From NCBI GenBank assembly GCA_002269645.1, contig NIVC01000777.1, positions 1 through 37,345 on the forward strand: a stretch of 37,345 nt of DNA, read 5' to 3'. Source of the DNA: Macrostomum lignano (lineage: Eukaryota). How positions within the stretch are numbered: position 1 is the first letter of the stretch; every line of letters starts with the position of its first letter. Positions 3,481 to 28,768 of this stretch are shown piece by piece. Both the position numbers and the translations under genes were made by a program. The notes under the pieces are model-generated. The model saw only the letters and a program-made list of their open reading frames with translations, did no database searches and was not told the DNA's origin.

Positions 3481-4394
3481 GACTCGAGCCTGGACCCGCA
3501 GTCGCCTGGTGGAGAGAACCGCCCTGTGGGCCAGCACTCCCCCATCCGTGACCAGGACCGCTTCCTGCCCATCGCCAACATATCGAAGATCATGAAGCGG
3601 ACCATCCCGGAGACTGGCAAGATCACCAAGGAGGCCAAAGAGTGCGTGCAGGAGTGCGTCTCCGAGTTCATCTCCTTCATCACCTCGGAGGCCTCCGACC
3701 GGTGCCAGGATGACAAGCGCAAGACTATGAACGGGGAGGACATCCTCACCGCTATGCAGGTGCGGCTGCGGATTTCACTGTGTTGGCTGTGCCGTCTTTT
3801 AAACGCTGCAGTCCATATCAGGGCTTTGGAATCTGGGAACTTGGAACACTCGACAGACGCGACCCTTCGTAGGTTCGGGCTTTGTTTCATAGAAGAGAGG
3901 CCTGACTAGCCAGCACCATCCGTCCCGTAGCAACAAAAGTTTCTGATTTCCGGTCTTCAGTTCAAACCAGCCACTTTCGATCTATTTAGGGATCGAGTCT
4001 GCATTGATTTCTTGAGCATCATCAGCTCAACCTGCTGCAACAATATTTGCTCAAAATTCTTTTATTACTACTAGTTAGCATTTAGCAAGCATAAATCGAT
4101 TTTATCCATGCACTTCAGGCCGTGGGCCTTGACAACTACATTGAGCCGCTGAAGCTCTACCTGCTGAAATACCGCGAGGCCAACAAGCTGGAGGCGGCTA
4201 ATGAGAGAGCTGGCAGCGCTGGCGCTTCCGCCTCGGCTTCCGGTGGCGTCAATCAGGACACGCCGTCCGCTGCCAGCTCTGCTGACGCCAGCGGTGCCGC
4301 TCCTCCGCCTTCCGTTGTTTCGGCGCCGACTGCCGTGACGCTGGCCGGCCTGGAGAATAGCAACGGCCAGGTGGTGTACCGGGTGATCATGTGA
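3481..4394 (+). CDS. NFYB: Nuclear transcription factor Y subunit B (histone-fold), 5'-incomplete; exons 3481-3759 and 4119-4394
   Basis: Translation contains [18 protein letters not shown]...[38 protein letters not shown]|[20 protein letters not shown], the NF-YB core. Phase-0 intron 3760-4118 (GTGCGG...TTCAG). The exon starts after the acceptor TTCAG at 3480 with no ATG before the conserved core. Confidence 0.95.
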
Positions 4395-4750
4395 GCCTGT
4401 TGCCAGGTGGTTGCCGGGTGATCATGAGACCCTGTTGCCAGGTGGTTGCCGGGTGATCATGAGACCCTGTTGCCAGGTGGTTGCCGGGTGATCATGAGAC
4501 CCTGTTGCCAGGTGGTTGCCGGGTGATCATGAGACCCTGTTGCCAGGTGGTTGCCGGGTGATCATGAGACCCTGTTGCCAGGTGGTTGCCGGGTGATCAT
4601 GAGACCCTGTTGCCAGGTGGTTGCCGGGTGATCATCAGACCCTGTTGCCAGGTGGTTGCCGGGTGATCATGAGACCCTGTTGCCAGGTGGTTGCCGTGAT
4701 CATGAGACCCTGCTGCCAGGTGGTTGCCGTGATCATGTGACCCTGTTGCC
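4367..4750 (+). repeat. 35-bp minisatellite, about 11 copies, overlapping the NF-YB stop codon
   Basis: Unit GAGACCCTGTTGCCAGGTGGTTGCCGGGTGATCAT. ATCAT recurs every 35 bp from 4386 to 4666, then at 33 bp. The first copy includes the last codons and the TGA. Confidence 0.95.
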
Positions 4751-7699: not shown

Positions 7700-8149
7700 T
7701 GAAGCATCAGGGTGTGGGGTGACGGTGTGCCTGAAGCATCAGGGTGTGGGGTGACGGTGTGCCTGAAGCATCAGGGTGTGGGGTGACAGTGTGCCTGAAG
7801 CATCAGGGTGTGGGGTGACAGTGTGCCTGAAGCATCAGGGTGTGGGGTGACAGTGTGCCTGAAGCATCAGGGTGTGGGGTGACAGTGTGCCTGAAGCATC
7901 AGGGTGTGTGGTGATAGTGTGCCTGAAGCATCAGGGTGTAGGATGACAGTGTGCCTGAAGCATCAGGGTGTGGGGTGACAGTGTGCCTGAAGCATCAGGG
8001 TGTAGGATGACAGTGTGCCTGAAGCATCAGGGTGTGGGGTGACAGTGTGCCTGAAGCATCAGGGTGTAGGATGACAGTGTGCCTGAAGCATCAGGGTGTG
8101 GGGTGACAGTGTGCCTGAAGCATCAGGGTGTAGGATGACAGTGTGCCTG
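7700..8149. repeat. 32-bp minisatellite, 14 copies
   Basis: Unit GTGTGCCTGAAGCATCAGGGTGTGGGGTGACA. CATCAG recurs every 32 bp from 7705 to 8121. Confidence 0.95.
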
Positions 8150-9459: not shown

Positions 9460-9996
9460 CAGGGGTCGGCAACTCCGGCCTGCAAAGCCTCTTCATCCGG
9501 CCCTCGCGGTCCTTTTAAACTGCACAATAGCAATCCGGCCCGCTCGATGTTTGTCTCTTCTCAGCGCTATTTTCTCCTCTCTTCTTCTCTCCTCTCTCCT
9601 CTCCTCTCTCCTCTCCTCTCTCCTCTCCTCTCTTCTCTCCTCTCTCCTCTCCTCTCTCCTCTCCTCTCTCCTCTCCTCTCTCCTCTCCTCTCTCCTCTCC
9701 TCTCTTCTCTCCTCTCTCCTCTCCTCTCTCCTCTCCTCTCTCCTCTCCTCTCTCCTCTCCTCTCTCCTCTCCTCTCTCCTCTTCTCTCTTCTTCCTACTC
9801 TCCCTCTCTCTTCTCTTTTCTACTCTCCTAGCCTAATTCATCTTCTCTCCTATCGTCTCCTCTTTGCTCCTTCCCTAACCTCTCCCTTTTCCTATATCCT
9901 TTCTTTTTTATTCCCTCTCATCTCCTTCCTCCGAACCGCAGTCATGCTCAAGGTTCTCTATCTGGCCCTTGGGGTAAAAAAGTTTGCCGACCCCTA
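9460..9996. mobile_element. Non-autonomous hAT-type DNA transposon (MITE)
   Basis: TIRs CAGGGGTCGGCAAC (9460-9473) and GTTTGCCGACCCCTA (9982-9996). 8-bp TSD ACATGAGC / ACATAAGC (7/8). Subterminal GGCC motifs. Confidence 0.85.
9572..9830. repeat. Pure C/T low-complexity tract (about 12-bp CTCCTCTCTCCT period) inside the hAT MITE
   Basis: Near-uninterrupted polypyrimidine run. It produces the spurious LLSP and SSLL ORFs. Confidence 0.9.
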
Positions 9997-10929: not shown

Positions 10930-13900
10930 TCAGTCGTCCTCCTCCTCGTCCTCCTCCTCCTCGCCCGCGCCCTCCTCGGCGCCCTCCTCGGCCTCGGCCA
11001 GGGCCGCCTTCAGCGCCGCCTCCTCCTCGGGCGTCGGGTCCTCCGTCTCGGTGATCTCCGGCCCGCTGGGGAACTCCAGCAGCACTGGCGGCGGCGGCGG
11101 TGGGCTGTAGTTCTCGGTGGCGTACTTGTGGCCCCAGCCGATGTACACGTTCTCGAATAGACTGCGGGCATGGGCGGGACTGGGCTGCGACTTCTCCGGC
11201 TCACTTCTCAGCTCCTGTGCCTTTCCGGTTCCTTTCTCTTCTCTCCCTTTTCCCTGCCTCCCTTTCTTCTCTCTCTTATTTTCCCTTTCTGCGATCGCTT
11301 TTTATTTAGTCACAGAGGCTACTTGGTTCTGCTGCAAAAATAATGCCTCTCATGTTCCTAATTCTCCCCTCTCATGTTCCTAATTCTACCCTCTCCTGTT
11401 CCTAATTCTCCCCTCACCTGTCCCTAATTCTCCCCTCTCCTGTTCCTAATTCTCCCCTCTCATGTTCCTAATTCTCTCCTCTCCTGTTCCTAATTCTCCC
11501 CTTTCATGTCCCTAATTCACCACTCTCCTGTTCCTAATTCTCCCCTCTCATGTTCCTAATTCTCCCCTCTCATGTTCCTAATTCTCCCCTCTCCTGTTCC
11601 TAATTCTCCCTCTCCTGTTCCTAATTCTCCCCTCTCCTGTTCCTAATTCTCCCCTCTCCTGTTCCTAATTCTACCCTCTCCTGTTCCTAATTCTCCCCTC
11701 ACCTGTCCCTAATTCTCCCCTCTCCTGTTCCTAATTCTCCCCTCTCATGTTCCTAATTCTCCCCTCTCCTGTTCCTAATTCTCCCCTTTCATGTCCCTAA
11801 TTCACCACTCTCCTGTTCCTAATTCTCCCCTTTCATGTCCCTAATTCACCACTCTCCTGTTCCTAATTCTCCCCTCTCATGTTCCTAATTCTCCCCTCTC
11901 CTGTTCCTAATTCTCCCCTCTCCTGTTCCTAATTCTCCCCTCTCCTGTTCCTAATTCTCCCCTCTCCTGTTCCTAATTCTCCCCTCTCCTGTTCCTAATT
12001 CTCCCCTCTCCTGTCCCTAATTCTCCCCTCTCCTGTCCCTAATTCTCCCCTCTCCTGTCGCTAATTCGCCACTCTCCTGTCCCTAATTCTCCCCTCACCT
12101 GTCCCTAATTCTCCCCTCTCCTGTCCCTAATTCTTCCCTCTCCTGTCCCTAATTCTCCCCTCACCTGTCCCTAATTCTCCCCTCTCCTGTCCCTAATTCT
12201 TCCCTCTCCTGTCCCTAATTCGCCACTCTCCTGTTCCTAATTCTCCCCTCTCCTGTTCCTAATTCTCCCCTCTCCTGTTCCTAATTCTCCCCTCTCATGT
12301 GCCTAATTCTCCCCTCTCCTGTTCCTAATTCTCCCCTCTCCTGTTCCTAATTCTCCCCTCTCATGTCCCTAATTCTCCCCTCTCCTGTCCCTAGCCTCTC
12401 ATGTCCCTTATTCTCCCCTCTCATGTCCCTAATTCTCCCGTCTCATGTCCCTAATTCTCCCCTCTCCTGTCCCTCGCCTTTCATGTCCCTAATTCTCCCC
12501 TCTCCTGTCCCTAGCCTCTCATGTCCCTAATTCTCCCCTCTCATGTCCCTAATTCTCCCGTCTCATGTCCCTAATTCTCCCCTCTCATGTGCCTAATTCT
12601 CCCCTCTCCTGTTCCTAATTCTCCCCTCTCCTGTTCCTAATTCTCCCCTCTCATGTCCCTAATTCTCCCCTCTCCTGTCCCTAGCCTCTCATGTCCCTTA
12701 TTCTCCCCTCTCATGTCCCTAATTCTCCCGTCTCATGTCCCTAATTCTCCCCTCTCCTGTCCCTCGCCTTTCATGTCCCTAATTCTCCCCTCTCCTGTCC
12801 CTAGCCTCTCATGTCCCTAATTCTCCCCTCTCATGTCCCTAATTCTCCCGTCTCATGTCCCTAATTCTCCCCTCTCCTGTCCCTCGCCTTTCATGTCCCT
12901 AATTCTCCCCTCTCCTGTCCCTAGCCTCTCATGTCCCTAATTCTCCCCTCTCCTGTCTCTCGCCTCTCATGTCCCTCGCCTCTCATGCCCCTAATTCTCC
13001 CCTCTCATGTCCCTAATTCTCCCCTCTCCTGTCCCTCCCCTCTCATGTCCCTAATTCTCCCCTCTCATGTCCCTAATTCTCCCCTCTCATGTCCCTAATT
13101 CTCCCCTCTCCTGTCCCTCCCCTCTCATGTCCCTAATTCTCCCCTCTCATGTCCCTAATTCTCCCCTCTCATGTCCCTAATTCTCCCCTCTCCTGTTCCT
13201 AATTCTCCCCTTTCTCTCTTCTCCCCAGTCATCTCTCGCCGCGACTCGCACCTGCCTTGGGCCACCGCGTACGCGCCCGGCCACAGGTTGGAGGACAGGA
13301 CGGCAACCGAGAACTGCGGCAGCAGCTGCGACGAGAGCCGCGCCGTCCACGGCTGGTTGCCGTCAACCTCCGCGTCCTCGGACAGCGGCGTCAGCAGCGG
13401 TGGGCCCTCCTCCGGCTGCGGCTCGTCCATCTCCTCCTTCTCCTCTTCATCCTCGTCGTCAACGGAATCGTCGTCCCGCTTCTGCGCCGGATTCCACCAG
13501 CGGGTGCGGCCCTGCGGCAGGACGTGCTGCACATGGTGCACCCAGCTGGACAGGCTGGGGTCGATGAGCTCCCGCACCGGCATCGGCTCGAACTCCGGGT
13601 TCTCCACGAAGTTGTCGCGGCCGCCGCCCTCCTCATCCTCTTCCTCCTCTTCGTCGAACATGTAAAAGCCCTGCAGTTTCGGTGAGGGTAAGCATTTGGG
13701 AAGGGTAGTCCAGACCAGGTAAGCCTGATTACCTGAAGTAAACATTTCTGAGCTCCTAGCCCGCTGTCAGCTGGTCTTCTGAGCCAGGACCCGCCGGGAA
13801 ACAGTTAATGTTCTATTAAACTGCCCGGTGCCCAACAGTTTTTCTTACATCAGCTGGCTATAAGGGAATCGCTTAATTCTCTTTCCTCGCTACTCGTCAG

Positions 13901-15298
13901 TAGACGCTCTCTTATGGTTTTACAACTTTGAGATTTAACTTTGACCACAGCATTGACTCGTTCCAAATTTTGCTAGCACAACATTGCACTCACCTGCGGC
14001 GAGATGATGGTGCCGGCTGAGATCCGGCAGACCTGAGCGCGCAGGTAGTTGGCCTCGTTGCCGGGAAACGGCGGGTAGGTGACCACAGGGGCGTCAAGGC
14101 GGCCGGTGAAGAACTTCTTCACCTTGCGGGCAGCCTGGATCTGCGCCGGGGTCACGCTGGGCAGGCGGGTCCAGGGCCGGCCGGGCTCCGAGCAGACAAA
14201 GTACACAAACCGGTTGACGCCGGAGCCGGCGTCTTCGCGTGGCACCACCGGCGGCGTCTTGAAGTCCGGCTTGGGGATCGGGTCCTCCGGCGGCTCCTCG
14301 TCGGCGTCGCCAGCGGCTTCAGCGTCAGCGGCGGAGTCGGCCCCGGCTTGTTCCGGCTTGCTGCCGTCGGCACTGCTGGCGGTGGCTGCCGCGGCCTTCG
14401 CCTCCTCCTCGACGATGGCGTCTATCTCATCCTGCTTGAGCAGACCCTCAGCGATGTAATAGCCACCCTCAGTGCCGAGGATTTTGCCCCAGAAGCGCAG
14501 CTGCTCGAAGCTGTGCTGCTTCTCCAGCTCTTTGAGAGCCAGCCACAGGCGGTAGGTCTCCTCAGCGTCCAGGCCTGAGTTTGGGAGTTTGCAGGAGAGC
14601 ATTGAATTGTCAAAAGCTCCAGCGGTTGCTATGGAAGATCTAAAACCCATAATTTATCTCCTGAGAGCTTCCTTCGCTTACCGACTCCTCCCTGCTCGAA
14701 CAGATAGGCGGTCTGCCACAGGTTGGGCAGCGCCGAATCCATCTCTTCCTCATCTTCATCGCCCTGGGTTGGCTGAAGATGCATTGGTTTGGAATTCAAT
14801 GCTTTTTAATTTCCTTCTGGCTAGAAAGTACACCGATAGGCAACTGTATGCTACAGTGCTCACCTCAAACAGATGCCGCTGCACTTCGGCCTTGGCCACC
14901 TCGGTAGTTCGCTCGTACTGGTTCTGCACCGTGTCCACGTTGGAGGCGAACCTCGCCCGTTTGCCCTCCTTGCTGATGTCTTCGAAGATGTCCACTACAT
15001 TGCTGGGTTTCTCCTCGAGGATCTTTTTCAGGCAGACGATGAGATGGTCGTACCTTGAATTCGGGCAGGTCGAGTTGTTGGTTAATTAGAGTCGGAGCAT
15101 TAAATTGTCTTTAGAAATTTCGAAACCCGGTAAAAAAACTTACAAGTTCATGCCACTCTGGCTGCTAGCGGTGAGCAGGTAGGCCTTGTTATCCGTGAAG
15201 TCGGACTCTCGCGGCACCAGGTCCTGCTGTTTGTCGCCAGCCCCTGTTGCGGGCGTCTGTGGCTTCGACGAGCCTTTCTGACTCTGCGCCTCGGACAT
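10930..15298 (-). CDS. RSPH4A: Radial spoke head protein 4/6 family (RSPH4A/RSPH6A-like), 555 aa; exons 15298-15144, 15053-14864, 14772-14682, 14574-13994, 13670-13252, 11161-10930
   Basis: Motifs KAYLL...NLYDHL...KILEEKP, LPNL...[95 protein letters not shown] and [13 protein letters not shown]. All five introns are GT-AG and preserve frame. The 4A versus 6A paralog label cannot be resolved. Confidence 0.93.
11345..13210. repeat. About 22-bp satellite (roughly 85 units) filling RSPH intron 5
   Basis: Unit CTAATTCTCCCCTCTCCTGTTC with variants. It occupies most of the 2090-bp intron 11162-13251. Confidence 0.95.
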
Positions 15299-17911
15299 TG
15301 CATGAAAGTTGGTAGGATTCTTTGTCTCTCAAATAAATATAATATTGTAGACAACTTATCGAGACTTGTTACACATTTTGTTACCCGTTTAGAAATGAAC
15401 TTACTAAACACTTTCTAAAGTTACTAAACATTTTCTGTGAGATTATTCCTGCCTCTGCCAGAAAAACTACCACTAAAGGAGAGAGTTGTGCATTTCAGAA
15501 AATAAGAATCTGAACCTAAAGGGGAAAATCAGGCGGAAACCTTAGAAAAGTTAGGAATCAGCATCACCAGTTATCAATAGTGGCAGCAATAATTTTAGAA
15601 ATCAAAATAATGGTATTCAGAAATAAGAGACATGTGACAAAAATAGTTTGTAAGTTTATTATTCTTTTTTCCTAGTCAGTTTGTTACGACTACTTAGTTT
15701 TCCTTAGTGAAACTGATTATACTGAATAATAATTAAATATTTTAACTAAATAGTATAAATAATACCAGATAATCAAGGTACAAAGGCTCATATTCCAGTT
15801 GATAATAAAATAACAATTGAGCTTTACTCAAAATAATGTTTCAAATTATTCCTAAAGTTCAAGCACAATAAAATTCAGGATTTAAAAGCTTCGATATTTA
15901 GTATTGCTTCGTATCAAAGCTTCGTATATAGTATTATCCTTTCAATTTAACGGTCTTTCAAAGTTAAAGCTTTAGCTAAATATAGCTGTATGCAACTGTA
16001 CGAATGTCCATTATCTGATGGTGAAACTAAAATATGCTGATGGAAATGATGGACGCCATATTTACATAAGAATCATACAAGTCCAAAAAGCTCTATGAAA
16101 AATTTCTGAAACTCCTGCAAGTTGTATTAGAAAAACAACTAATACAGCGAACAACTTTGAAAAGTCTAAAATCGACCAGATAAGAAAAATTATATATTTC
16201 ATATTTTTGCGTATCTATGGATACAGTACATTCTCAGGAGCAGAAAACCACGGCTACATAAATAACATAACTAATAACTCATTTTCATTTTATGTCACAT
16301 TTGTTGTTTTCACTTAGTTACTTAGATGTTTACTAAGCATACAAAACGTTTGTTAATTTTACTCAAGATTTTTTAATTTTTTTATTTAATTTTTTCTGCA
16401 AAAAAGCTCCTGCCTGCATGCATGCATGTGCATGCGCACGCATATTAAAGCTCTAAGCTCAGCTCCACTTATCAATATCAATATCAGTAAGATATTATTA
16501 TTTAAGTGTGATACCTTGATTTAATTTTTGATATACAATCCTCTGCAAACAAATTTTTTACTTGGGGGATAGTATTACGAAATTGATAAAAAGCCCAAGT
16601 TTTGTTATCCGATCCCTTTGCATACATTTCCTCCATTTAAATGATCATATAACAAAAGTGAATATAGATACATCCCTCTCTTGCCAAGAATCTTGTCGTG
16701 TCTTTGTTTGATTGCCTTGTTTTGGTTGAACTCCACTTCAAATAGACATCAATTGAAACTGCCTTAATGTAGTGCCTTTGACTCATGGATACTGTTTTAT
16801 CTGGTTTCTATTCTTTGACTGCATCTTTTACATGGGGATTGTATAACAAAAGTGCCTAGGAATAGAGATTGTAAAATGAAAGAATGCCCAAATATTATCA
16901 CTTAGCAGCAGTTTGTCAGTCTATTTATTTAAGTAGCATGAACATCGTGCTTTGGATCATATATGCACAACCTCTGAAATTAATCTAGCAATATAAATGC
17001 AGTTTCTTGCAATAATTTTTTTTCTAAAATCATTTGATATTTTAAACATATTGCAGAAAAGTATTGTAGATTGTTAAGTATCACAAAGGTAACAAATCTA
17101 TTATACATTTTTAGCTATCAAAGATCATTTTTGTTATTGGTGCAAGTGGATGCCCAGCCATTATATTGCAGCTGAAATGAGTGCAAATTTAAATGAAAAA
17201 TAATTTTATATAGAAAACTATGGCATCCACTAAAATATAAGAGTGGATATAGAATGTTTGCTAAAATGTGGAAAATGGAATATTTTCCTATATTATCGAA
17301 GTAGATGCAGATGTTAATTTAAATTGTGCAGGTGGCTGTCAGACAAGCTCACAAGCAATGATTTATGATCCCACAATGGCACAAGTAGCAAAAACCATAC
17401 CTATATTATTATGACTACAAGTATAGCAAAATCATCTACAAAAATGCTAGGGGTGACTTGAAAGAGATGACAGAGCTAGCCAGTGATAATGCAAAGGGTC
17501 TAGTTCTAGTTCTATGCAAGTTTTAGTTTAATCATGGCCATGTCAGTAAGCAACGATTAAAAATCAATTGTCTTTGAGTAAAAATCAATGTTGTTATTAA
17601 ATATATAGGCATTGTTATTAAATGTGTTGTTTTTAGACTAAACACTTGTACCTAATGAGAACTTGAGTGCATATGTCTTGTCAATAGAAACAATCAGATG
17701 ATTTCAACACTTGCCCATGAAAATTCATGTGTAAGTCTGATAAGGCAAAGGTGAAAAAATTTTTTTGAGAATGCCTGCTAAAACTGCACTGTTTGTATTG
17801 AATAATATTGAGGAATACGCATTTTGCCAAGCAGTCCTGTACCGATTTGTTATTACTAAACCTTAACCTAAATTGTATTTCACTCATGTCCATCCAAGAC
17901 TTCGCGTTTCC

Positions 17912-19488
<1,577 letters not shown>

Positions 19489-19984
19489 CAGTTGCGAGCG
19501 CAGCTCTCTGTTTGCGAGAAAAATTTTCCCTAAAGCAGCTGTCCGCCCCGGATCGATTGAGATTCAAATTCGATGGGTTCCCATTGCGTGTTAGCTCGTT
19601 ATATGTGTTTGATTTAAGATGTTTTTGATGATTGTGATTGAAATTGAAATGCAGTTTTTGCGCTGATCTGTTGTTCATTCGCTTATCCAATCCAACGTCC
19701 CGTTGAAAACGTTACCGTTACGGAAATCGCTGGAGTCATTGCCAACACGCGAAAGATTTGTTCAATAGTCGGTTTGTTAGCGCTTAGCTTACTACTATCT
19801 TGAGTACACTAATAAGAGTTTTTATAAATGCGAAATGCAATTCTGACTCAAGCAAGCAACGCCTGAGATACGATTCTACGGCCCCGGAGTCATTCTAGAA
19901 GCGCCCCAGACTCACGCCTCAAATAGGCTCTTAGGCGACTCTTTTACGACTTTTTTGGCGTCCTTCACCGTGACTTCTCGTCCT

Positions 19985-20130
19985 TTTAGAGTCCTCTAGA
20001 GTCGCTTCTGTCCTATTTTACCTGTGTTGTTACCTGGGCGACGCAAGTGACTCTGGGACGCTTCCTGGCCTTGGGGTACCGTTTTTCATCGGAACGCTTG
20101 TCCGTTTATTTGTTGTGCCCGTCTTCCGCT
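19985..20130 (+). repeat. Dispersed repeat copy B, with an inverted partner at 19899-19915
   Basis: 23/24 match to 5717-5740. AAGCGCCCCAGACTCAC (19899-19915) is a 15/17 reverse complement of 20047-20063. Confidence 0.55.
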
Positions 20131-20701
20131 ATAAAGTGTTTCTGCTTGCTGCTTTCCTGTATTGGTGTGTGGGAGTTCCCGCTGATTTGCAATGTTATAT
20201 TCACCTCCCTTGCTATTATGGTCAATCTGGTCAGTGTTAATCCGTTTGCTATTTATCAGCTAATAATACATCATATTACACGCGCCGTCGCATTATATAT
20301 TATTTTACCTAGCTGAGTATAACTCTGTCCCGCCCTGTCCGACATTCCCCATGCATTGGAATCCACAGTCAGTGCTTAGCGACCTGCTTGACTGGTTCAC
20401 TTTCTTTCAATTAGTTTCTGTTGCGCTTGCTCGCTGAAAAGATAAAAAAATAGTAAAACAGTGACGAATTTCTTTTGCTTCGGGATGATTTGGTTTTTTT
20501 GTTTCCTTACTTTTTTATAATGCATAAATGCCATAAATATCAAAGCGGTGCAGGGGTTTTGTGGTGTACAATATGTGTCCGAACACTGATTGCACACTGA
20601 TTGTTGAAGTAGAGCTTCGAGCGTGTGCGTGTCACAGGTGACGACACAGGTAGAATCTCGCAAAAAGAATTTTAAAATTATCATCAATTTCCCATCTGCA
20701 G

Positions 20702-23592
20702 TCGCGCATCGAGTTCCCGCCAGTGGAAGAAATCCAACGGCAATGCCACGAGCTGGAGGCTCTGCTGGACGGCGAAGACGACGGCGACGAGTCCGGATCT
20801 GCGAAGCGGCGCGACCGGCCCTGCCCGCTGTGCGGCCGGCAGTTCCGCCTCTTGGCCAACCTGCGCCGGCACCTCCGCCTGCGGCACGCGCTGCTGCACC
20901 GGCAGGAGTCTCCCGAGCAGCCGCCCAGGAAGCGGAGCCGCCCGACCGGCCCAGCAAAGAAGCCGGGATGGGCCGGCGCCAGCGGCGAGTGGCGCAGCGC
21001 CGAGGTGGCCAGCCACGCCGAGCTGACAGCCTGGCGCCTCAGCCACGAGGCCAGCGTCGGCTGCCGGTACTATGTCAGCAGCCTGCGGCGGGAGGGCGGC
21101 GGCGGCGAGCCCGGGGCGGTTCGCTACTGCGTGCACAGCTGCAGCGCTGGCTGGCGGACCCGCCTGGCCTGCCCGGCCCGCATCATCGCCTCCAGGCGGC
21201 CGGGCGGCCTGGCCGGCTACCGGATTCGCTACTCCCTGCTGCACCGCCACCACCCAGAGCACCGGCCGCCCGCCCGCACCCGCTTCAGCGCTGGCGAAGC
21301 CAGTCACGTGCCAGACGTGCGCGCCCGCGCGCTGCGCTCGGCGCTGCTGTCTACTGAGGAGCCCGACCGGCTGTGCGACCCCCGGCTGGCCCGGCGCCTG
21401 ACGCGCGAGGCCCTACGCGGCCATGCCCTGGGCGGCCAGCAGCCGTGGCAGGCGGTCGAGGATCGGCTGCTGGCCGAACTGGCGGCCGGGCCGGCCAGCC
21501 CGCTGCTGCTGTGCCAGTTCCGGCGCTCCTGGTGCTTCAGAAACCGCGTCCGGCTTGGCGCCGGCTTTCGCCCGTCTGACGGCGCGCTCGGCTGCGCGCT
21601 GACGCTGCAGGCGCCGTCAGAGCGGCAGCTGCTGGCGCAGCGTCTTTCCAGCGCCGAAGCTCTGGTCATCGACTGCGTCTACGAGAGCTCCGACCCCGAG
21701 GAGATCAGCGTGCTCTGCCTGCTGCTGCTGGATGCTGAGGGTGAGGCAGTCGGCAACTGTATGCAGTTTTGAATGAGAAAAATAGCCCTATCGACTTTAT
21801 TGATTGCTGCTTGGCATTTCAGGGCGGCCACAGACAGGCGGCTGGCTGCTGACTGACCGAGTCACCGAGACTCGCGTTGAGGACTGGCTGCGCTGCTGCG
21901 TCACCGCGGCGGCCGATTCGCCTCGCTCCGACTCCGGCTGCGCCTTCACCGGCTGGCTGCTGCTGCCGCCCGGACTGCTGGGCGCCACTGCCGGGGCCCG
22001 CGTGTTCCCCAGGGCTGCCGGCTGTTTTGCCGAGCGGCTGCAGCTGCTGAGGAGCTGGCGGCGCTGCCTGCAGGTGAGCGTCTGCCATCTGATTGTCTCT
22101 TCAGTCCACTCCCCTGTTTTTAGACCTCTCCATTGTGTCAGTCGTCCCAATTGTGTCCTCAGTCCACCGCATTGTGTCCTCAGTCCACCGCATTGCGTCT
22201 TCAGTCCACCTCATTGCGTCCTCAGTCCACCGCATTGCGTCCTCAGTTCTCCCTATTTTCCTCAGTTCTCCCTATTGTGTCCTCAGTTCTCCCTATTTTC
22301 CTCAGTTCTCCCTATTTTCCTCAGTTCTCCCTATTTTCCTCAGTTCTCCCTATTTTCCTCAGTTCTCCCTATTTTCCTCAGTTCTCCCTATTTTCCTCAG
22401 TTCTCCCTATTTTCCTCAGTTCTCCCTATTTTCCTCAGTTCTCCCTATTTTCCTCAGTCCACTCCACTGTCACTCAACCGCAGGCCCGCCCGGACCAGTG
22501 GGACGTGGCCGCCCTGCTGCTGCTGGAGCTCCACGCCGCGGCAGTGCAGCCGCAGCTCGGCCGGGCCTCCGCCGCCCTGTCAGAATTCGCCAGAAAATTC
22601 CGCCGCGTCTCGCCGGAGCTGGCGGCTCGCGCCGACCGCCTTGCCCGCTGGCCGCAGCTGTGGGCGGACGCGGCCAAGCCGGCCCGCCTTCGCTGGGTGG
22701 AGATGCGGCTGCACTCGAACCCGGGACTGCTCGGTCTGCTACCCCTGCACTTCGCCGGACGGACGCGCCGGCCCGACCGCCTGCTGGCGCTGGTGCTGGA
22801 GGCGGCTGACTGGCGCCGCAGCTGCTGCGAGCTGGACGACGACCTCGATAGCCACCGGGAGTCCCTGGCCGGCGACACCGCCACCGCCCCGGTGACGGCG
22901 GCTTTTCGGACAGACGCGCCGGCCATTCACAGCGGGCCCGCCTGGCCGGATTTGGCCGATCAGTTCTGTCCGAGGGAGATCCAGGTGAGCGGGTGTCCAT
23001 GAATATGCGGGTGTCCATGAATATGCATTCTGAATTCAGCTCGCAATGCTGTACATGCACTGCTGTCGCACTCTTGCAGGCGCAGCTGGCCGGGCAGCCC
23101 TGCCTCGTGGCCGGCAGCCAGCTGGTCCGCCGGGTTCGCTCCGTCTGTCCGGAGCGGCTCTGCTTCCGACTCTGCCCGTCCGCCGCCTGTGCCGGCCTGT
23201 GCCCGCACCTGTACCGCTGCGACTGCCGGCCGGCGGGCCAGACCGGCTTCTGCCGCCACGTGCACCGGGCGCACGCCGATCTGACAGCCCGCCTGCTGCA
23301 CACGCCGGCTGCCGAGGCGGTGCGCAGAGCCACTGTGGCCGAACAGCCACTGCTGCTGCCGGCCAGGCCGTCCGACCAGCTGCTGGTTGAAGCGGAGCTC
23401 GGCCTGTCAGCGGAGCCGCATCAGCAGCCGCATCAGCTCGCCGCGGCTGCCAGTTCCGCGACAGTCCCGACGCATTCGGCAGAGCTGCAAGTCTGGCTGC
23501 CGGACGCACCGCTGCCGCCGCAACCGCTGATATCCTCGGACCTCAGCCCACGGGCTCAGCAGCTGATTAGCCTGCTGCTGGACGATGATTGA
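20702..23592 (+). CDS. C2H2 zinc finger + MULE transposase-derived + SWIM domain protein (about 767 aa, no in-window ATG); exons 20702-21740, 21823-22073, 22484-22984, 23080-23592
   Basis: CPLCGRQFRLLANLRRHLRLRH (C2H2). CVHSC...CPARI...YSLLHRHH (WRKY/GCM1-like). LVIDCVYE...LLLLDAEG|RPQTGGWLL (MULE RNase H-like core). RPDRLLALV. CPHLYRCDC-x8-CRHVH (SWIM). Three GT-AG introns preserve frame. Confidence 0.75.
22150..22460 (+). repeat. Adjacent 21-bp and 19-bp minisatellites in intron 2 of the MULE-derived gene
   Basis: CCTCAGTCCACCGCATTGTGT (about 4 copies) grades into CTCAGTTCTCCCTATTTTC (about 11 copies; CTCAG every 19 bp from 22282 to 22453). Confidence 0.9.
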
Positions 23593-24763
23593 CAGGCATT
23601 TATTTGCGGCTGCTGTCCGAATACCTTAATTACACTTGTGCATTTGCTGCTGCTGTTTATTGTTTATATTCGATCTTGTTCGGCATTCTGAATGCAACTT
23701 GAACTTCTCAAATAATTCAAATAAAGTAAAAAAATCGAAGACCGGGCAGAATCCAATTGGCTTTACCGATCAGATAGAGAGGAGACCTGAAATTCTGGGG
23801 CTGCCTATCAGCAATGGCGGCGTGTCAAAACATGATTTATTATTTAACAATGCCTGATGAGATCGATCAATGGTTAGCGGCACAACAGCGGGGACAGCAA
23901 CTGGAGTCGCTGGGCGGGCAAGTATAAAACACACACACACACTTAACGCATCTCTCAAAAAGGAGAATTTTCAGTCATATTGTTGGAATAAACAAACAAA
24001 CATACAAAACCGGCAGCGCCTAAACAATTGTAAAACGAACCGAAGCTAAGAAAGTAAAAAACGGGAATCACGCAATGCGGATTAATAATGAGGCTTTGTA
24101 CAGGGACTATGACAGAATTGAGCCTGGGAATTCTTTCCTAATAGAAAAGATTATAAATATGCTACGAAAATTGAACTATTGAATCGGTGCCAAGTTGTGA
24201 AAGCAATTTTAACAAAAAGTATTACAACGCCCACAGTGGAATTGAGTTGCAGAAACTGAAGCAGCGGCAACAACAGAGACAAAGGTATAACAGAAGCCAG
24301 GCAGGAAAGCGAGATTAGGCGGGGCGGACAGGAGGATTAAGCCATGACTTGCTGGGGCTGCCGTACTACTGAGGAAAAACAACTGGTCAAATTTTAGCAC
24401 CAGGACGTTGCCTGCCGATAATTAATTTAAAAAAAGCTATTTTATTGTTAGTTTTTACCTGAACGCGCAGTATAGCAGAAAAACTACATGTACAGCAGCG
24501 AGTGTACACAGCGGTTATTTCCATACAGTAACCAAACATACTACTAGTCTGTTAGTAGCGCAAGTTCTAGGATAAGATAAAACTGTTGTCTTGGTTTAGT
24601 GATATGCAACGACGTAAATATTTCTGTCATTTTAGCTAAGCTTGCAGACCTGGGGACTGACTGACAGCTGAACCCTGACCGGCGCACCAATTTCATGATA
24701 CGAAGAAATAAAAATCAAAAGTTAATCCGGCTCCAGTCCCAATTGCCATGGCAACCGGGTCAG

Positions 24764-28768
<4,005 letters not shown>

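What the first reader, a model, noticed from the sequence alone, without database searches (positions are those of the whole stretch)
20690..21740. A 346-codon first exon with no methionine: candidate start codon donated by a spliced leader
Seen: CATCTGCAG|TCG CGC ATC opens a phase-0 frame with no ATG through exons 1 and 2, and the first Met is in exon 3. Nearby upstream ATG and donor combinations (20520, 20528, 20573; donors 20638, 20650) give the wrong phase, a stop or a poor donor. Established: the flatworm SL ends in AUG usable for initiation. Inference: translation would depend on trans-splicing, giving MSRIEFPP. This is the strongest of three such cases in the window.
Basis: partly seen in the sequence, partly recalled or inferred. 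Interest (0 to 1): 0.75.

Follow-up and report, generated by a model that had tools for sequence, protein, structure and literature searches.

The report
Flatworm gene borrowing spliced-leader start codon
This is a real Macrostomum lignano gene for a transposase-derived zinc-finger protein that has no start codon of its own for its first 503 codons and most likely takes its AUG from the trans-spliced leader, a mechanism known in flatworms since 2006.

Summary
The window is Macrostomum lignano contig NIVC01000777.1. A four-exon, 767-codon frame (20702-23592, + strand) opens directly after CTGCAG|TCG. It has no ATG in exons 1 and 2, and its only Met is codon 504 in exon 3. GenBank annotates the gene as "partial".

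The frame is under purifying selection. Variable codons among three intact copies are 19 synonymous to 10 non-synonymous, against 1:28 and 6:22 in the other two frames.

The acceptor is the only match to the published M. lignano trans-splice motif [T/C]TNCAG in the 1.2 kb downstream of the upstream gene UBA5. No GT[G/A]AG donor lies upstream of it. The published 35-nt spliced leader ends in ATG and would join in phase, giving M-SRIEFPP. Three RNA-seq-based gene models begin 0, 6 and 9 nt after this AG. Two copies share a transcription-unit name with UBA5, which suggests a two-gene operon.

I could not see leader-containing reads, so trans-splicing at 20702 is inferred, not shown.

The mechanism is textbook for flatworms and has been noted for Macrostomum. 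This is a new, unusually clear-cut example, not a new phenomenon. The protein is a diverged MULE/ZSWIM-like domesticated transposase.

The parts
17912..19488 (+). Upstream cistron: UBA5 (ubiquitin-like modifier-activating enzyme 5). Exons 17912-18334 and 18688-19488, with its own ATG at 17912 and its stop ending at 19488.
   Evidence: Translation. PDB human UBA5 match, E 7e-132. GenBank names BOX15_Mlig033309g3/g5.
19489..20701 (+). Intercistronic region or outron, 1213 nt and AT-rich. It contains no GT[G/A]AG donor and no AATAAA or ATTAAA. It holds several out-of-frame or stop-terminated ATGs, and TATAAA at 19823 and 20130.
20651..20653 (+). In-frame TAG that closes the reading frame upstream of the acceptor.
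20682..20701 (+). Pyrimidine-rich tract (70% C+T) ending in CTGCAG. This is the predicted spliced-leader trans-splice acceptor and an exact match to [T/C]TNCAG.
   Evidence: motif taken from PMC8629364.
20702..21740 (+). Exon 1, 346 codons plus 1 nt, with no ATG in frame. It begins SRIEFPP.
   Evidence: The GenBank coding sequence of paralogue g4 starts exactly at the equivalent position.
20822..20887 (+). C2H2 zinc finger, residues 41-62 (CPLCGRQFRLLANLRRHLRLRH).
   Evidence: Pfam zf-C2H2 E 0.0015, below the curated cut-off. phmmer hits to multi-C2H2 proteins over residues 26-72.
21596..22028 (+). Diverged MULE / ZSWIM1-3 RNaseH-like region, residues about 299-415. It spans exons 1 and 2 and includes the intron 21741-21822.
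   Evidence: BLASTP against P0025, E 5e-11. P0025 carries PF10551 and PF21056 in the aligned stretch. hhalign probability 97.5%.
21823..22073 (+). Exon 2, with no ATG in frame.
22484..22984 (+). Exon 3. It contains the only in-frame ATG, at 22703-22705 (codon 504).
23080..23592 (+). Exon 4 with a SWIM-like zinc finger (residues 612-665, nt 23122-23283; YRCDCRPAGQTGFCRHVH) and the stop TGA at 23590-23592.
   Evidence: UniRef names the 264-aa copy 'SWIM-type domain-containing protein'.
23720..23725 (+). AATAAA, the likely poly(A) signal of the gene.

Best explanation
The locus is a real, expressed M. lignano gene (GenBank PAA76948.1, BOX15_Mlig023565g1). It encodes a roughly 768-aa diverged, domesticated MULE/ZSWIM-type transposase relative with an N-terminal C2H2 finger, an RNaseH-like core and a C-terminal SWIM-like finger.

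The gene lies 1.2 kb downstream of UBA5 on the same strand. It is probably transcribed at least partly as a UBA5-to-gene precursor. The 5' end of the mature mRNA is made by spliced-leader trans-splicing at the AG at 20700-20701. The 35-nt leader ends in AUG, which lands in phase 0 with TCG at 20702. Translation then starts on the leader's AUG and yields M-SRIEFPPVEE....

Without the leader, the first AUG in the mRNA (20743) is out of frame. The first in-frame AUG (codon 504) would give only the C-terminal 264-aa SWIM fragment.

Shown here: the frame, its splice sites, its selection as coding, the absence of a genomic ATG, the motif match, the absence of upstream donors, and the 5' ends of the annotations.

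Inferred: that the leader is actually joined at 20702, that its AUG is used, and the operon arrangement.
For: 1. Organism and leader. The window is M. lignano contig NIVC01000777.1. The leader ends in ATG, and about 30% of M. lignano genes are trans-spliced (PMC8629364).
2. Acceptor. CTGCAG|T at 20696-20702 is the only [T/C]TNCAG in 19489-20760. It has the highest pyrimidine content of the 15 AG sites nearby. G+C jumps from 0.42 to 0.63 to 0.78 across it.
3. Donors. There is no GT[G/A]AG anywhere in 19300-20701. None of the 15 phase-compatible ATG-to-GT combinations has a canonical donor.
4. Annotation. The GenBank models are built from RNA-seq with transcript boundaries cut at sites where leader-bearing reads map (PMC5730564). 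They start at the equivalents of 20702, 20708 and 20711 in three copies. None extends into the open frame 20654-20701 and none carries an upstream exon.
5. Shared transcription unit. UBA5 copies are Mlig033309g3 and g5, and the candidate copies are g2, g4 and g6. Two unrelated genes can share this prefix only if they were assembled in one transcriptional unit.
6. Coding frame. Three copies keep the intact 767-codon frame and all splice sites. Variable codons are 19 synonymous to 10 non-synonymous (P = 2e-5 against neutrality). The other frames give 1:28 and 6:22. Twenty of 29 variable sites are third codon positions.
7. N-terminus. Homologues begin with M and a C2H2 finger within about 10 residues, so no N-terminal domain is missing.
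8. Precedent. Use of the leader's AUG as initiator is established in flatworms and is noted for Macrostomum.
Against: - No leader-containing read, 5' RACE product or peptide could be inspected.
- The three annotated 5' ends differ by 0, 6 and 9 nt instead of all sitting at the AG. I cannot explain that.
- The motif alone is not significant. By my own rough estimate, not a tool result, about two YTNCAG matches would be expected by chance in 1.2 kb. Its weight comes from where it sits.
- The four copies are 97-99% identical throughout, intergenic DNA included, so conservation of the acceptor carries no information.
- The context of the leader's AUG (UUGCAUGU) is not a strong Kozak context.
- A UniProt model joins UBA5 in frame to the same acceptor.
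- No orthologue outside M. lignano was found to check the N-terminus.
Confidence: 0.75

Rival explanations
1. A cis-spliced upstream exon supplies the ATG. One version is a UBA5-transposase fusion: a donor GCA|GTGCAG at 19431|19432 inside the last UBA5 exon joins acceptor 20702, as in UniProt A0A1I8GZ54. The other is a mini-exon, ATG 20218 ... CTG|GTCAGT 20230, giving MVNL-SRIEF.
For: P0002 (UniProt A0A1I8GZ54) reads ...AAAPAAA|SRIEFPP, an in-frame join to the same acceptor. A phase-0 ATG-to-GT pair exists at 20218/20230. Flatworm acceptors are often shared between cis- and trans-splicing (PMC12582326).
Against: - Neither donor matches GT[G/A]AG, the motif found at about 65% of M. lignano donors. 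All three donors of this gene are GTGAG.
- P0002 comes from the older, error-prone ML2 assembly. It has other anomalies (frameshifted and skipped UBA5 segments, truncated end), as expected from an ab initio model forced to find a start.
- The RNA-seq-based GenBank models end UBA5 at its normal stop and give the candidate no upstream exon in any of three copies.
- From my own knowledge of human UBA5, the fusion would remove the conserved C-terminal tail ...[12 protein letters not shown], which is the UFC1-binding segment.
- Homologues have no long N-terminal extension.
Confidence: 0.07
2. No leader AUG is used. Translation starts at a near-cognate codon (for example GUG 20723) or at the only genomic AUG (codon 504), which would give just the 264-aa SWIM-containing C-terminal protein. 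GenBank annotates the L003 copy that way.
For: GenBank PAA64934.1 (P0005) is annotated from Met504. GTG 20723 has G at +4.
Against: - Codons 1-503 are under purifying selection in this frame. They hold the C2H2 finger and the RNaseH-like core.
- The L003 model starts at Met504 only because that copy has 1-bp homopolymer indels in exon 1.
- An mRNA starting at 20702 has an out-of-frame AUG at 20743 opening a 200-codon frame before any in-frame AUG.
- GUG 20723 has C at -3.
Confidence: 0.08
3. The locus is not translated as a full-length protein. It would be a decaying transposase relic, or a read-through tail of UBA5 transcripts, whose long open frames are a by-product of 73% G+C.
For: - Other frames of exon 1 also carry 200-244-codon open frames.
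- Pfam finds no domain above its cut-offs.
- No orthologue was found in 1.84 billion representative proteins.
- One copy is frameshifted.
- The conserved C..H of the MULE core appears lost in the BLASTP alignment.
Against: - The frame stays open across four exons with consistent phases in three copies.
- Synonymous to non-synonymous changes are 19:10, against 1:28 and 6:22 in the other frames.
- GC3 is 86% against 73% overall.
- All zinc-ligand residues of the SWIM-like finger are kept.
- The gene passed the annotators' filter that removed repeat-overlapping transcripts.
- There are no terminal inverted repeats, and all copies are syntenic.
Confidence: 0.07

Closest known systems
[quoted passage not shown]
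   Same: The leader ends in AUG, the acceptor sits directly before the first sense codon in phase 0, and there is no genomic initiator. PMC3510090 reports 35 S. japonicum genes known to use the leader's AUG and 143 of 187 E. granulosus leader-bearing clusters predicted full-length from it.
   Different: This case is in a free-living macrostomorphan. In many published cases another AUG lies within a few codons. Here the next in-frame AUG is 503 codons away, so dependence on the leader would be absolute. Trans-splicing at this site is inferred here, not observed.
M. lignano operons and transcriptional units resolved by spliced-leader trans-splicing (Wudarski et al. 2017, PMC5730564; Ustyantsev and Berezikov 2021, PMC8629364)
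   Same: Same-strand neighbours, a shared transcriptional-unit name (Mlig033309 g3/g4 and g5/g6), a [T/C]TNCAG acceptor on the downstream gene, and no canonical poly(A) hexamer in the spacer.
   Different: The stop-to-acceptor distance is 1213 nt. The commonest spacing in that study is about 100 bp and its operon cut-off is 1 kb measured between transcript ends. The 3' end of UBA5 is unknown to me, and an own promoter (TATAAA at 20130) is not excluded.
Animal MULE / ZSWIM1-3-like transposase-derived proteins (Pfam PF10551 MULE, PF21056 ZSWIM1-3_RNaseH-like)
   Same: Same domain order of C2H2 finger, RNaseH-like core and Cys/His SWIM-like finger. hhalign gives 97.5% probability over residues 256-670 against five such proteins.
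   Different: About 20% identity. The candidate itself does not reach any Pfam cut-off. The C..H motif of the core seems lost. It occupies a fixed syntenic position with no terminal inverted repeats, so it looks domesticated rather than mobile.
slORFs: open reading frames created by start codons inside spliced leaders (slORFfinder, PMC9851317)
   Same: The leader supplies the start codon of the translated frame.
   Different: That work tested nematodes, ascidians and euglena with ribosome footprints. No flatworm data were used, and no such data exist for this gene.

Membership tests
Leader-AUG-initiated trans-spliced flatworm mRNA | The organism's spliced leader ends in AUG | tested here: met
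   The window is M. lignano. The published leader is ...TTATTGCATG (PMC8629364). The ATG is noted as a start codon in Macrostomum (PMC10468722). The leader gene itself is not in the window.
Leader-AUG-initiated trans-spliced flatworm mRNA | [quoted passage not shown] | tested here: met
   There is a single [T/C]TNCAG, at 20696-20701, and no GT[G/A]AG in 19300-20701.
Leader-AUG-initiated trans-spliced flatworm mRNA | The leader's AUG is in frame with the main open reading frame with no intervening stop | tested here: met
   ATG|TCG CGC ATC continues for 767 codons over four exons.
Leader-AUG-initiated trans-spliced flatworm mRNA | No genomic in-frame AUG at or near the N-terminus | tested here: met
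   The first in-frame ATG is codon 504. An upstream in-frame TAG lies at 20651.
Leader-AUG-initiated trans-spliced flatworm mRNA | Leader-containing transcripts joined at this acceptor | not testable with these tools
   Only indirect evidence. The annotated 5' ends lie 0-9 nt after the AG in three copies, and the annotation pipeline cuts transcripts at leader-read peaks. No gene-level table naming this gene was found.
Leader-AUG-initiated trans-spliced flatworm mRNA | Translation actually initiates on the leader's AUG | not testable with these tools
   This needs ribosome profiling, N-terminomics or a reporter.
M. lignano operon (polycistronic transcriptional unit) | Adjacent same-strand genes assembled in one transcriptional unit | tested here: met
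   UBA5 is Mlig033309g3 and g5, and the candidate is g2, g4 and g6. The naming rule is in PMC5730564. This is an inference from names. In the window itself the candidate has its own prefix, Mlig023565.
M. lignano operon (polycistronic transcriptional unit) | Distance between transcripts below 1 kb after subtracting repeats | tested here: inconclusive
   1213 nt from the UBA5 stop to the acceptor. The UBA5 poly(A) site is unknown, and the spacer has no AATAAA or ATTAAA.
MULE / ZSWIM1-3-like transposase-derived protein | RNaseH-like MULE core | tested here: inconclusive
   No Pfam hit for the candidate even at E = 10. However, BLASTP gives E 5e-11 and hhalign 97.5% to proteins that carry PF10551 and PF21056 in the aligned stretch.
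MULE / ZSWIM1-3-like transposase-derived protein | SWIM-type CxCxnCxH zinc finger | tested here: met
   YRCDCRPAGQTGFCRHVH aligns column for column with the invariant C/H columns of the family. There are phmmer hits over residues 610-690. UniRef names the short copy a SWIM-type domain protein.
Active MULE transposon | Terminal inverted repeats and copies at unrelated genomic sites | tested here: not met
   No flanking inverted repeats. All four copies lie between UBA5 and a DOT1-domain gene.

The most novel reading that the evidence does not exclude
The acceptor at 20702 is shared between trans-splicing and a weak in-frame donor inside the last UBA5 exon (19431|19432). The locus would then also produce a host-transposase fusion protein: the UBA5 E1 adenylation domain, minus its C-terminal tail, joined to a C2H2/MULE/SWIM DNA-binding module. 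On this reading the balance between leader trans-splicing and cis-splicing decides whether the cell makes free transposase-derived protein or the chimera.
Probability: 0.05. Interest if true: 0.55.

Novelty: new member of a known kind. Interest (0 to 1): 0.22.

Why it matters
Biologically it adds little, because start-codon donation by the leader has been established in flatworms since 2006.

Its practical value is for annotation. GenBank labels this protein and its paralogues "partial", and labels one copy as a 264-aa fragment. UniProt carries a chimeric UBA5 fusion. All three are likely artefacts of ignoring the leader's ATG, and the same fix (prepend Met at the trans-splice site) probably applies to many M. 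lignano "partial" models.

The gene is also a clean test case. The next in-frame AUG is 503 codons away, so full-length protein output should depend absolutely on trans-splicing. M. lignano has transgenesis, so this can be tested directly.

Tried and rejected
- Direct RNA evidence. Exact-sequence contig look-ups for P0001, P0003, P0004 and P0005 returned only the GenBank genome contigs and no transcript assemblies. The full-length homology search found no transcript-derived fragment.
- Gene-level tables. Searches for Mlig033309 and Mlig023565 in the paper library and in the supplements of PMC5730564, PMC5816591 and PMC8629364 found nothing.
- Cheng et al. 2006 is not held in the library, so it is cited only through papers that cite it.
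- Conservation of the acceptor. The four loci are 97-99% identical in intergenic DNA too, so the comparison has no power.
- Orthologues to fix the N-terminus. None were found. Only the C2H2 and SWIM-like segments hit anything among 1.84 billion representatives.
- Pfam on the whole protein and on three pieces gave nothing above cut-off.
- An N-terminal FAR1/WRKY-like domain seemed visible by eye (LACPARI......YSLLHRHH). hhalign aligned only the C2H2 finger at 8% probability, so I do not claim it.
- The leader gene was searched for in the window and is absent.
- Terminal inverted repeats were searched for around the gene and none were found.
Full report
**What the window is.** A homology search with the spliced translation returned a 100% match to GenBank PAA76948.1, [quoted passage not shown]. 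It lies on a contig of exactly the window's length. The contig look-up identified it as NIVC01000777.1 of assembly GCA_002269645.1 (Mlig_3_7), with the annotated coding sequence spanning 20708-23592.

**The observation.** The sequence at the site is tttcccatctgcag|TCGCGCATC. The frame is closed by TAG at 20651-20653 and open from 20654. I rebuilt the gene as four exons: 20702-21740, 21823-22073, 22484-22984 and 23080-23592. All acceptors are CAG| and all donors are |GTGAG. The spliced frame has 767 sense codons, 73% G+C and 86% GC3. It has one Met, codon 504 (ATG 22703-22705 in exon 3).

From the position-specific composition of the coding sequence, 7.3 ATG codons are expected. The probability of none is 0.036 for exon 1 and 0.008 for the first 503 codons. 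The absence is real and unusual, but part of it comes from the extreme G+C bias.

**Is the frame really coding?** The assembly holds four copies of the locus: the window, L001, L002 and L003. All lie in the same neighbourhood: radial-spoke gene (- strand), UBA5 (+), candidate (+), DOT1-domain gene (-). Three copies keep the whole 767-codon frame and every splice site, with Met only at 504. Among these three:
- 29 nucleotide sites vary, and 20 of them are third codon positions (P = 9e-5);
- variable codons are 19 synonymous to 10 non-synonymous (P = 2e-5 against the neutral 73% non-synonymous);
- the same sites read in the other two frames give 1:28 and 6:22.

That singles out this frame, and not the 200-244-codon open frames that the G+C richness creates in the other frames. 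The fourth copy (L003) has 1-bp indels in G/C homopolymers of exon 1. This explains why GenBank annotates it only from Met504 as a 264-aa protein.

**What the protein is.** An exhaustive phmmer scan of 1.84 billion representative proteins found no full-length relative. It found hits only to residues 26-72 (C2H2 finger) and about 610-690 (Cys/His SWIM-like finger). The proteins hit by the second segment are animal proteins with C2H2 fingers, Pfam MULE (PF10551) and ZSWIM1-3 RNaseH-like (PF21056) domains, and the same C-terminal finger.

BLASTP of the candidate against one of them aligns residues 299-728 (E 5e-11). A profile comparison with five of them gives 97.5% probability over residues 256-670. 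The candidate itself reaches no Pfam cut-off. It has no flanking inverted repeats and sits at one syntenic position. I therefore read it as a diverged, domesticated MULE/ZSWIM-type transposase relative.

The relatives begin with Met followed by a C2H2 finger within about 10 residues. A candidate N-terminus 40 residues before its finger is therefore not missing a domain. An N-terminal FAR1/WRKY-like resemblance that I thought I saw was not supported.

**The acceptor and the leader.** Ustyantsev and Berezikov 2021 (PMC8629364) report four things for M. lignano:
- the 35-nt leader is CGGTCTCTTACTGCGAAGACTCAATTTATTGCATG;
- the cis donor motif is GT[G/A]AG;
- the trans-acceptor motif is [T/C]TNCAG, placed exactly at the junction;
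- about 30% of genes are trans-spliced.

In the window, CTGCAG at 20696-20701 is the only [T/C]TNCAG between the UBA5 stop and 20760. No GT[G/A]AG occurs anywhere in 19300-20701. Of the 15 AG dinucleotides in 20600-20780, this one has the most pyrimidine-rich upstream tract. G+C rises from 0.42 to 0.63 to 0.78 across it.

Joining the leader gives ...TTGC ATG TCG CGC ATC, that is M-S-R-I, in phase. I listed all 15 upstream ATG-to-GT pairs that would join in frame, and none has a canonical donor. The least bad is ATG 20218 ... CTG|GTCAGT.

The motif by itself is not statistically remarkable in 1.2 kb. What counts is that it coincides with the start of the selected frame and the composition step.

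**Transcript evidence, at second hand.** The GenBank annotation derives from the Mlig_RNA_3_7_DV1 assembly. In that assembly, RNA-seq-assembled "transcriptional units" were cut into genes at peaks of leader-trimmed reads and at poly(A) sites. Open reading frames were then called with TransDecoder, and repeat-overlapping transcripts were removed (PMC5730564).

The three full-length copies are all "partial". They begin SRIEFPP (g4, exactly at the AG), IEFPP (the window) and EFPP (g6). These are the equivalents of 20702, 20708 and 20711. None extends into the 48 nt of open frame upstream of the AG, and none has an upstream exon. So the annotated mRNAs end at or just inside the acceptor. I cannot explain the 6- and 9-nt offsets.

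The UBA5 copies carry the names Mlig033309g3 and g5, and the candidate copies carry g2, g4 and g6. Prefixes were given per transcriptional-unit cluster and the two genes are unrelated. The shared prefix therefore implies that RNA-seq linked them in one unit, that is, a polycistronic precursor.

The spacer is 1213 nt and lacks AATAAA and ATTAAA. Whether it meets the published 1-kb operon criterion depends on the unknown 3' end of UBA5.

**The rival fusion model.** UniProt A0A1I8GZ54 (P0002) fuses UBA5 to the candidate, reading ...AAAPAAA|SRIEFPP. It uses GCA|GTGCAG at 19431|19432 and the same acceptor, in frame. The model comes from the older assembly, contains frameshifted and skipped UBA5 segments, and uses a non-consensus donor. 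It would also delete the C-terminal tail of UBA5 (the UFC1-binding segment, from my own knowledge of human UBA5). UBA5 itself is an unambiguous orthologue (E 7e-132 to human UBA5 structures). I regard the fusion as a gene-finder's way of giving the frame a start codon, but low-level use of that junction is not excluded.

**Comparison with what is known.** All reported flatworm leaders end in AUG, and this AUG can serve as initiator (Cheng et al. 2006, cited). PMC3510090 counts 143 of 187 leader-bearing E. granulosus clusters as full-length from the leader's ATG. It also refers to 35 S. japonicum genes known to use it. [quoted passage not shown] Those authors left it untrimmed to avoid annotation problems.

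The mechanism is therefore established, and this gene is a new member of a known kind. The one distinguishing point is degree: the next in-frame AUG is 503 codons downstream and the first AUG in the mRNA (20743) is out of frame. Full-length protein should therefore depend entirely on the leader.

**Verdict.** Novelty is low. The decisive check, counting reads with the junction CAATTTATTGCATG|TCGCGCATCGAGTTCC in public RNA-seq, could not be run here.

Noticed in passing
window 19431-19432 joined to 20702; protein P0002: UniProt A0A1I8GZ54 is a chimeric model that fuses UBA5 in frame to the transposase-derived gene through a weak GTGCAG donor inside the last UBA5 exon. It is probably an ab initio artefact. 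If real, it would be a host-transposase fusion.
   Followed up: partly
L003 5754-6791 (NIVC01001698.1), equivalent to window 21090, 21324 and 21423: This copy is otherwise 99.6-100% identical to the window. It has 1-bp indels in G/C homopolymers of exon 1 that break the frame, so GenBank annotates only a 264-aa protein from Met504. This is either an assembly error or a recent pseudogene.
   Followed up: partly
window 18358-18648: The single UBA5 intron is almost entirely a (CTGT)n microsatellite of about 74 copies.
   Followed up: no
window 22240-22458: Intron 2 of the candidate gene holds a 19-nt minisatellite (TCCTCAGTTCTCCCTATTT, 11 copies, 98% matches). It is preceded by related degenerate units from about 22150.
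   Followed up: no
window 25140-25792 and 26654-26923: 34-nt (19 copies) and 26-nt (10 copies) minisatellites sit between G+C-rich minus-strand exons of the downstream DOT1-domain gene. Introns in this contig are repeatedly filled by private tandem repeats.
   Followed up: no
window 11346-13211, 9573-9816, 4366-4750 and 7700-8149: A 1.9-kb array of a 22/44-nt CT-rich unit (87 copies) explains the strong negative GC and AT skew at 11-13 kb; a 12-nt TC-rich array at 9573-9816 lies in the similarly skewed 9-10 kb bin. It lies within the span of the radial-spoke gene (10930-15298, - strand). There are further 12-, 35- and 32-nt arrays upstream.
   Followed up: no
window 17891-17911: The GenBank UBA5 protein is also labelled 'partial' and starts HPRLRVS before its obvious Met (ATG 17912). 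The cause is that the frame is open to the transcript's 5' end. So 'partial' in this annotation does not by itself mean that a start codon is missing.
   Followed up: yes
window 19489-20701: There is no AATAAA or ATTAAA hexamer anywhere between the UBA5 stop and the candidate's acceptor; only TATAAA (19823, 20130), AATAAG (19811) and AGTAAA (20452) occur. This fits read-through transcription, but the UBA5 poly(A) site is unknown.
   Followed up: partly
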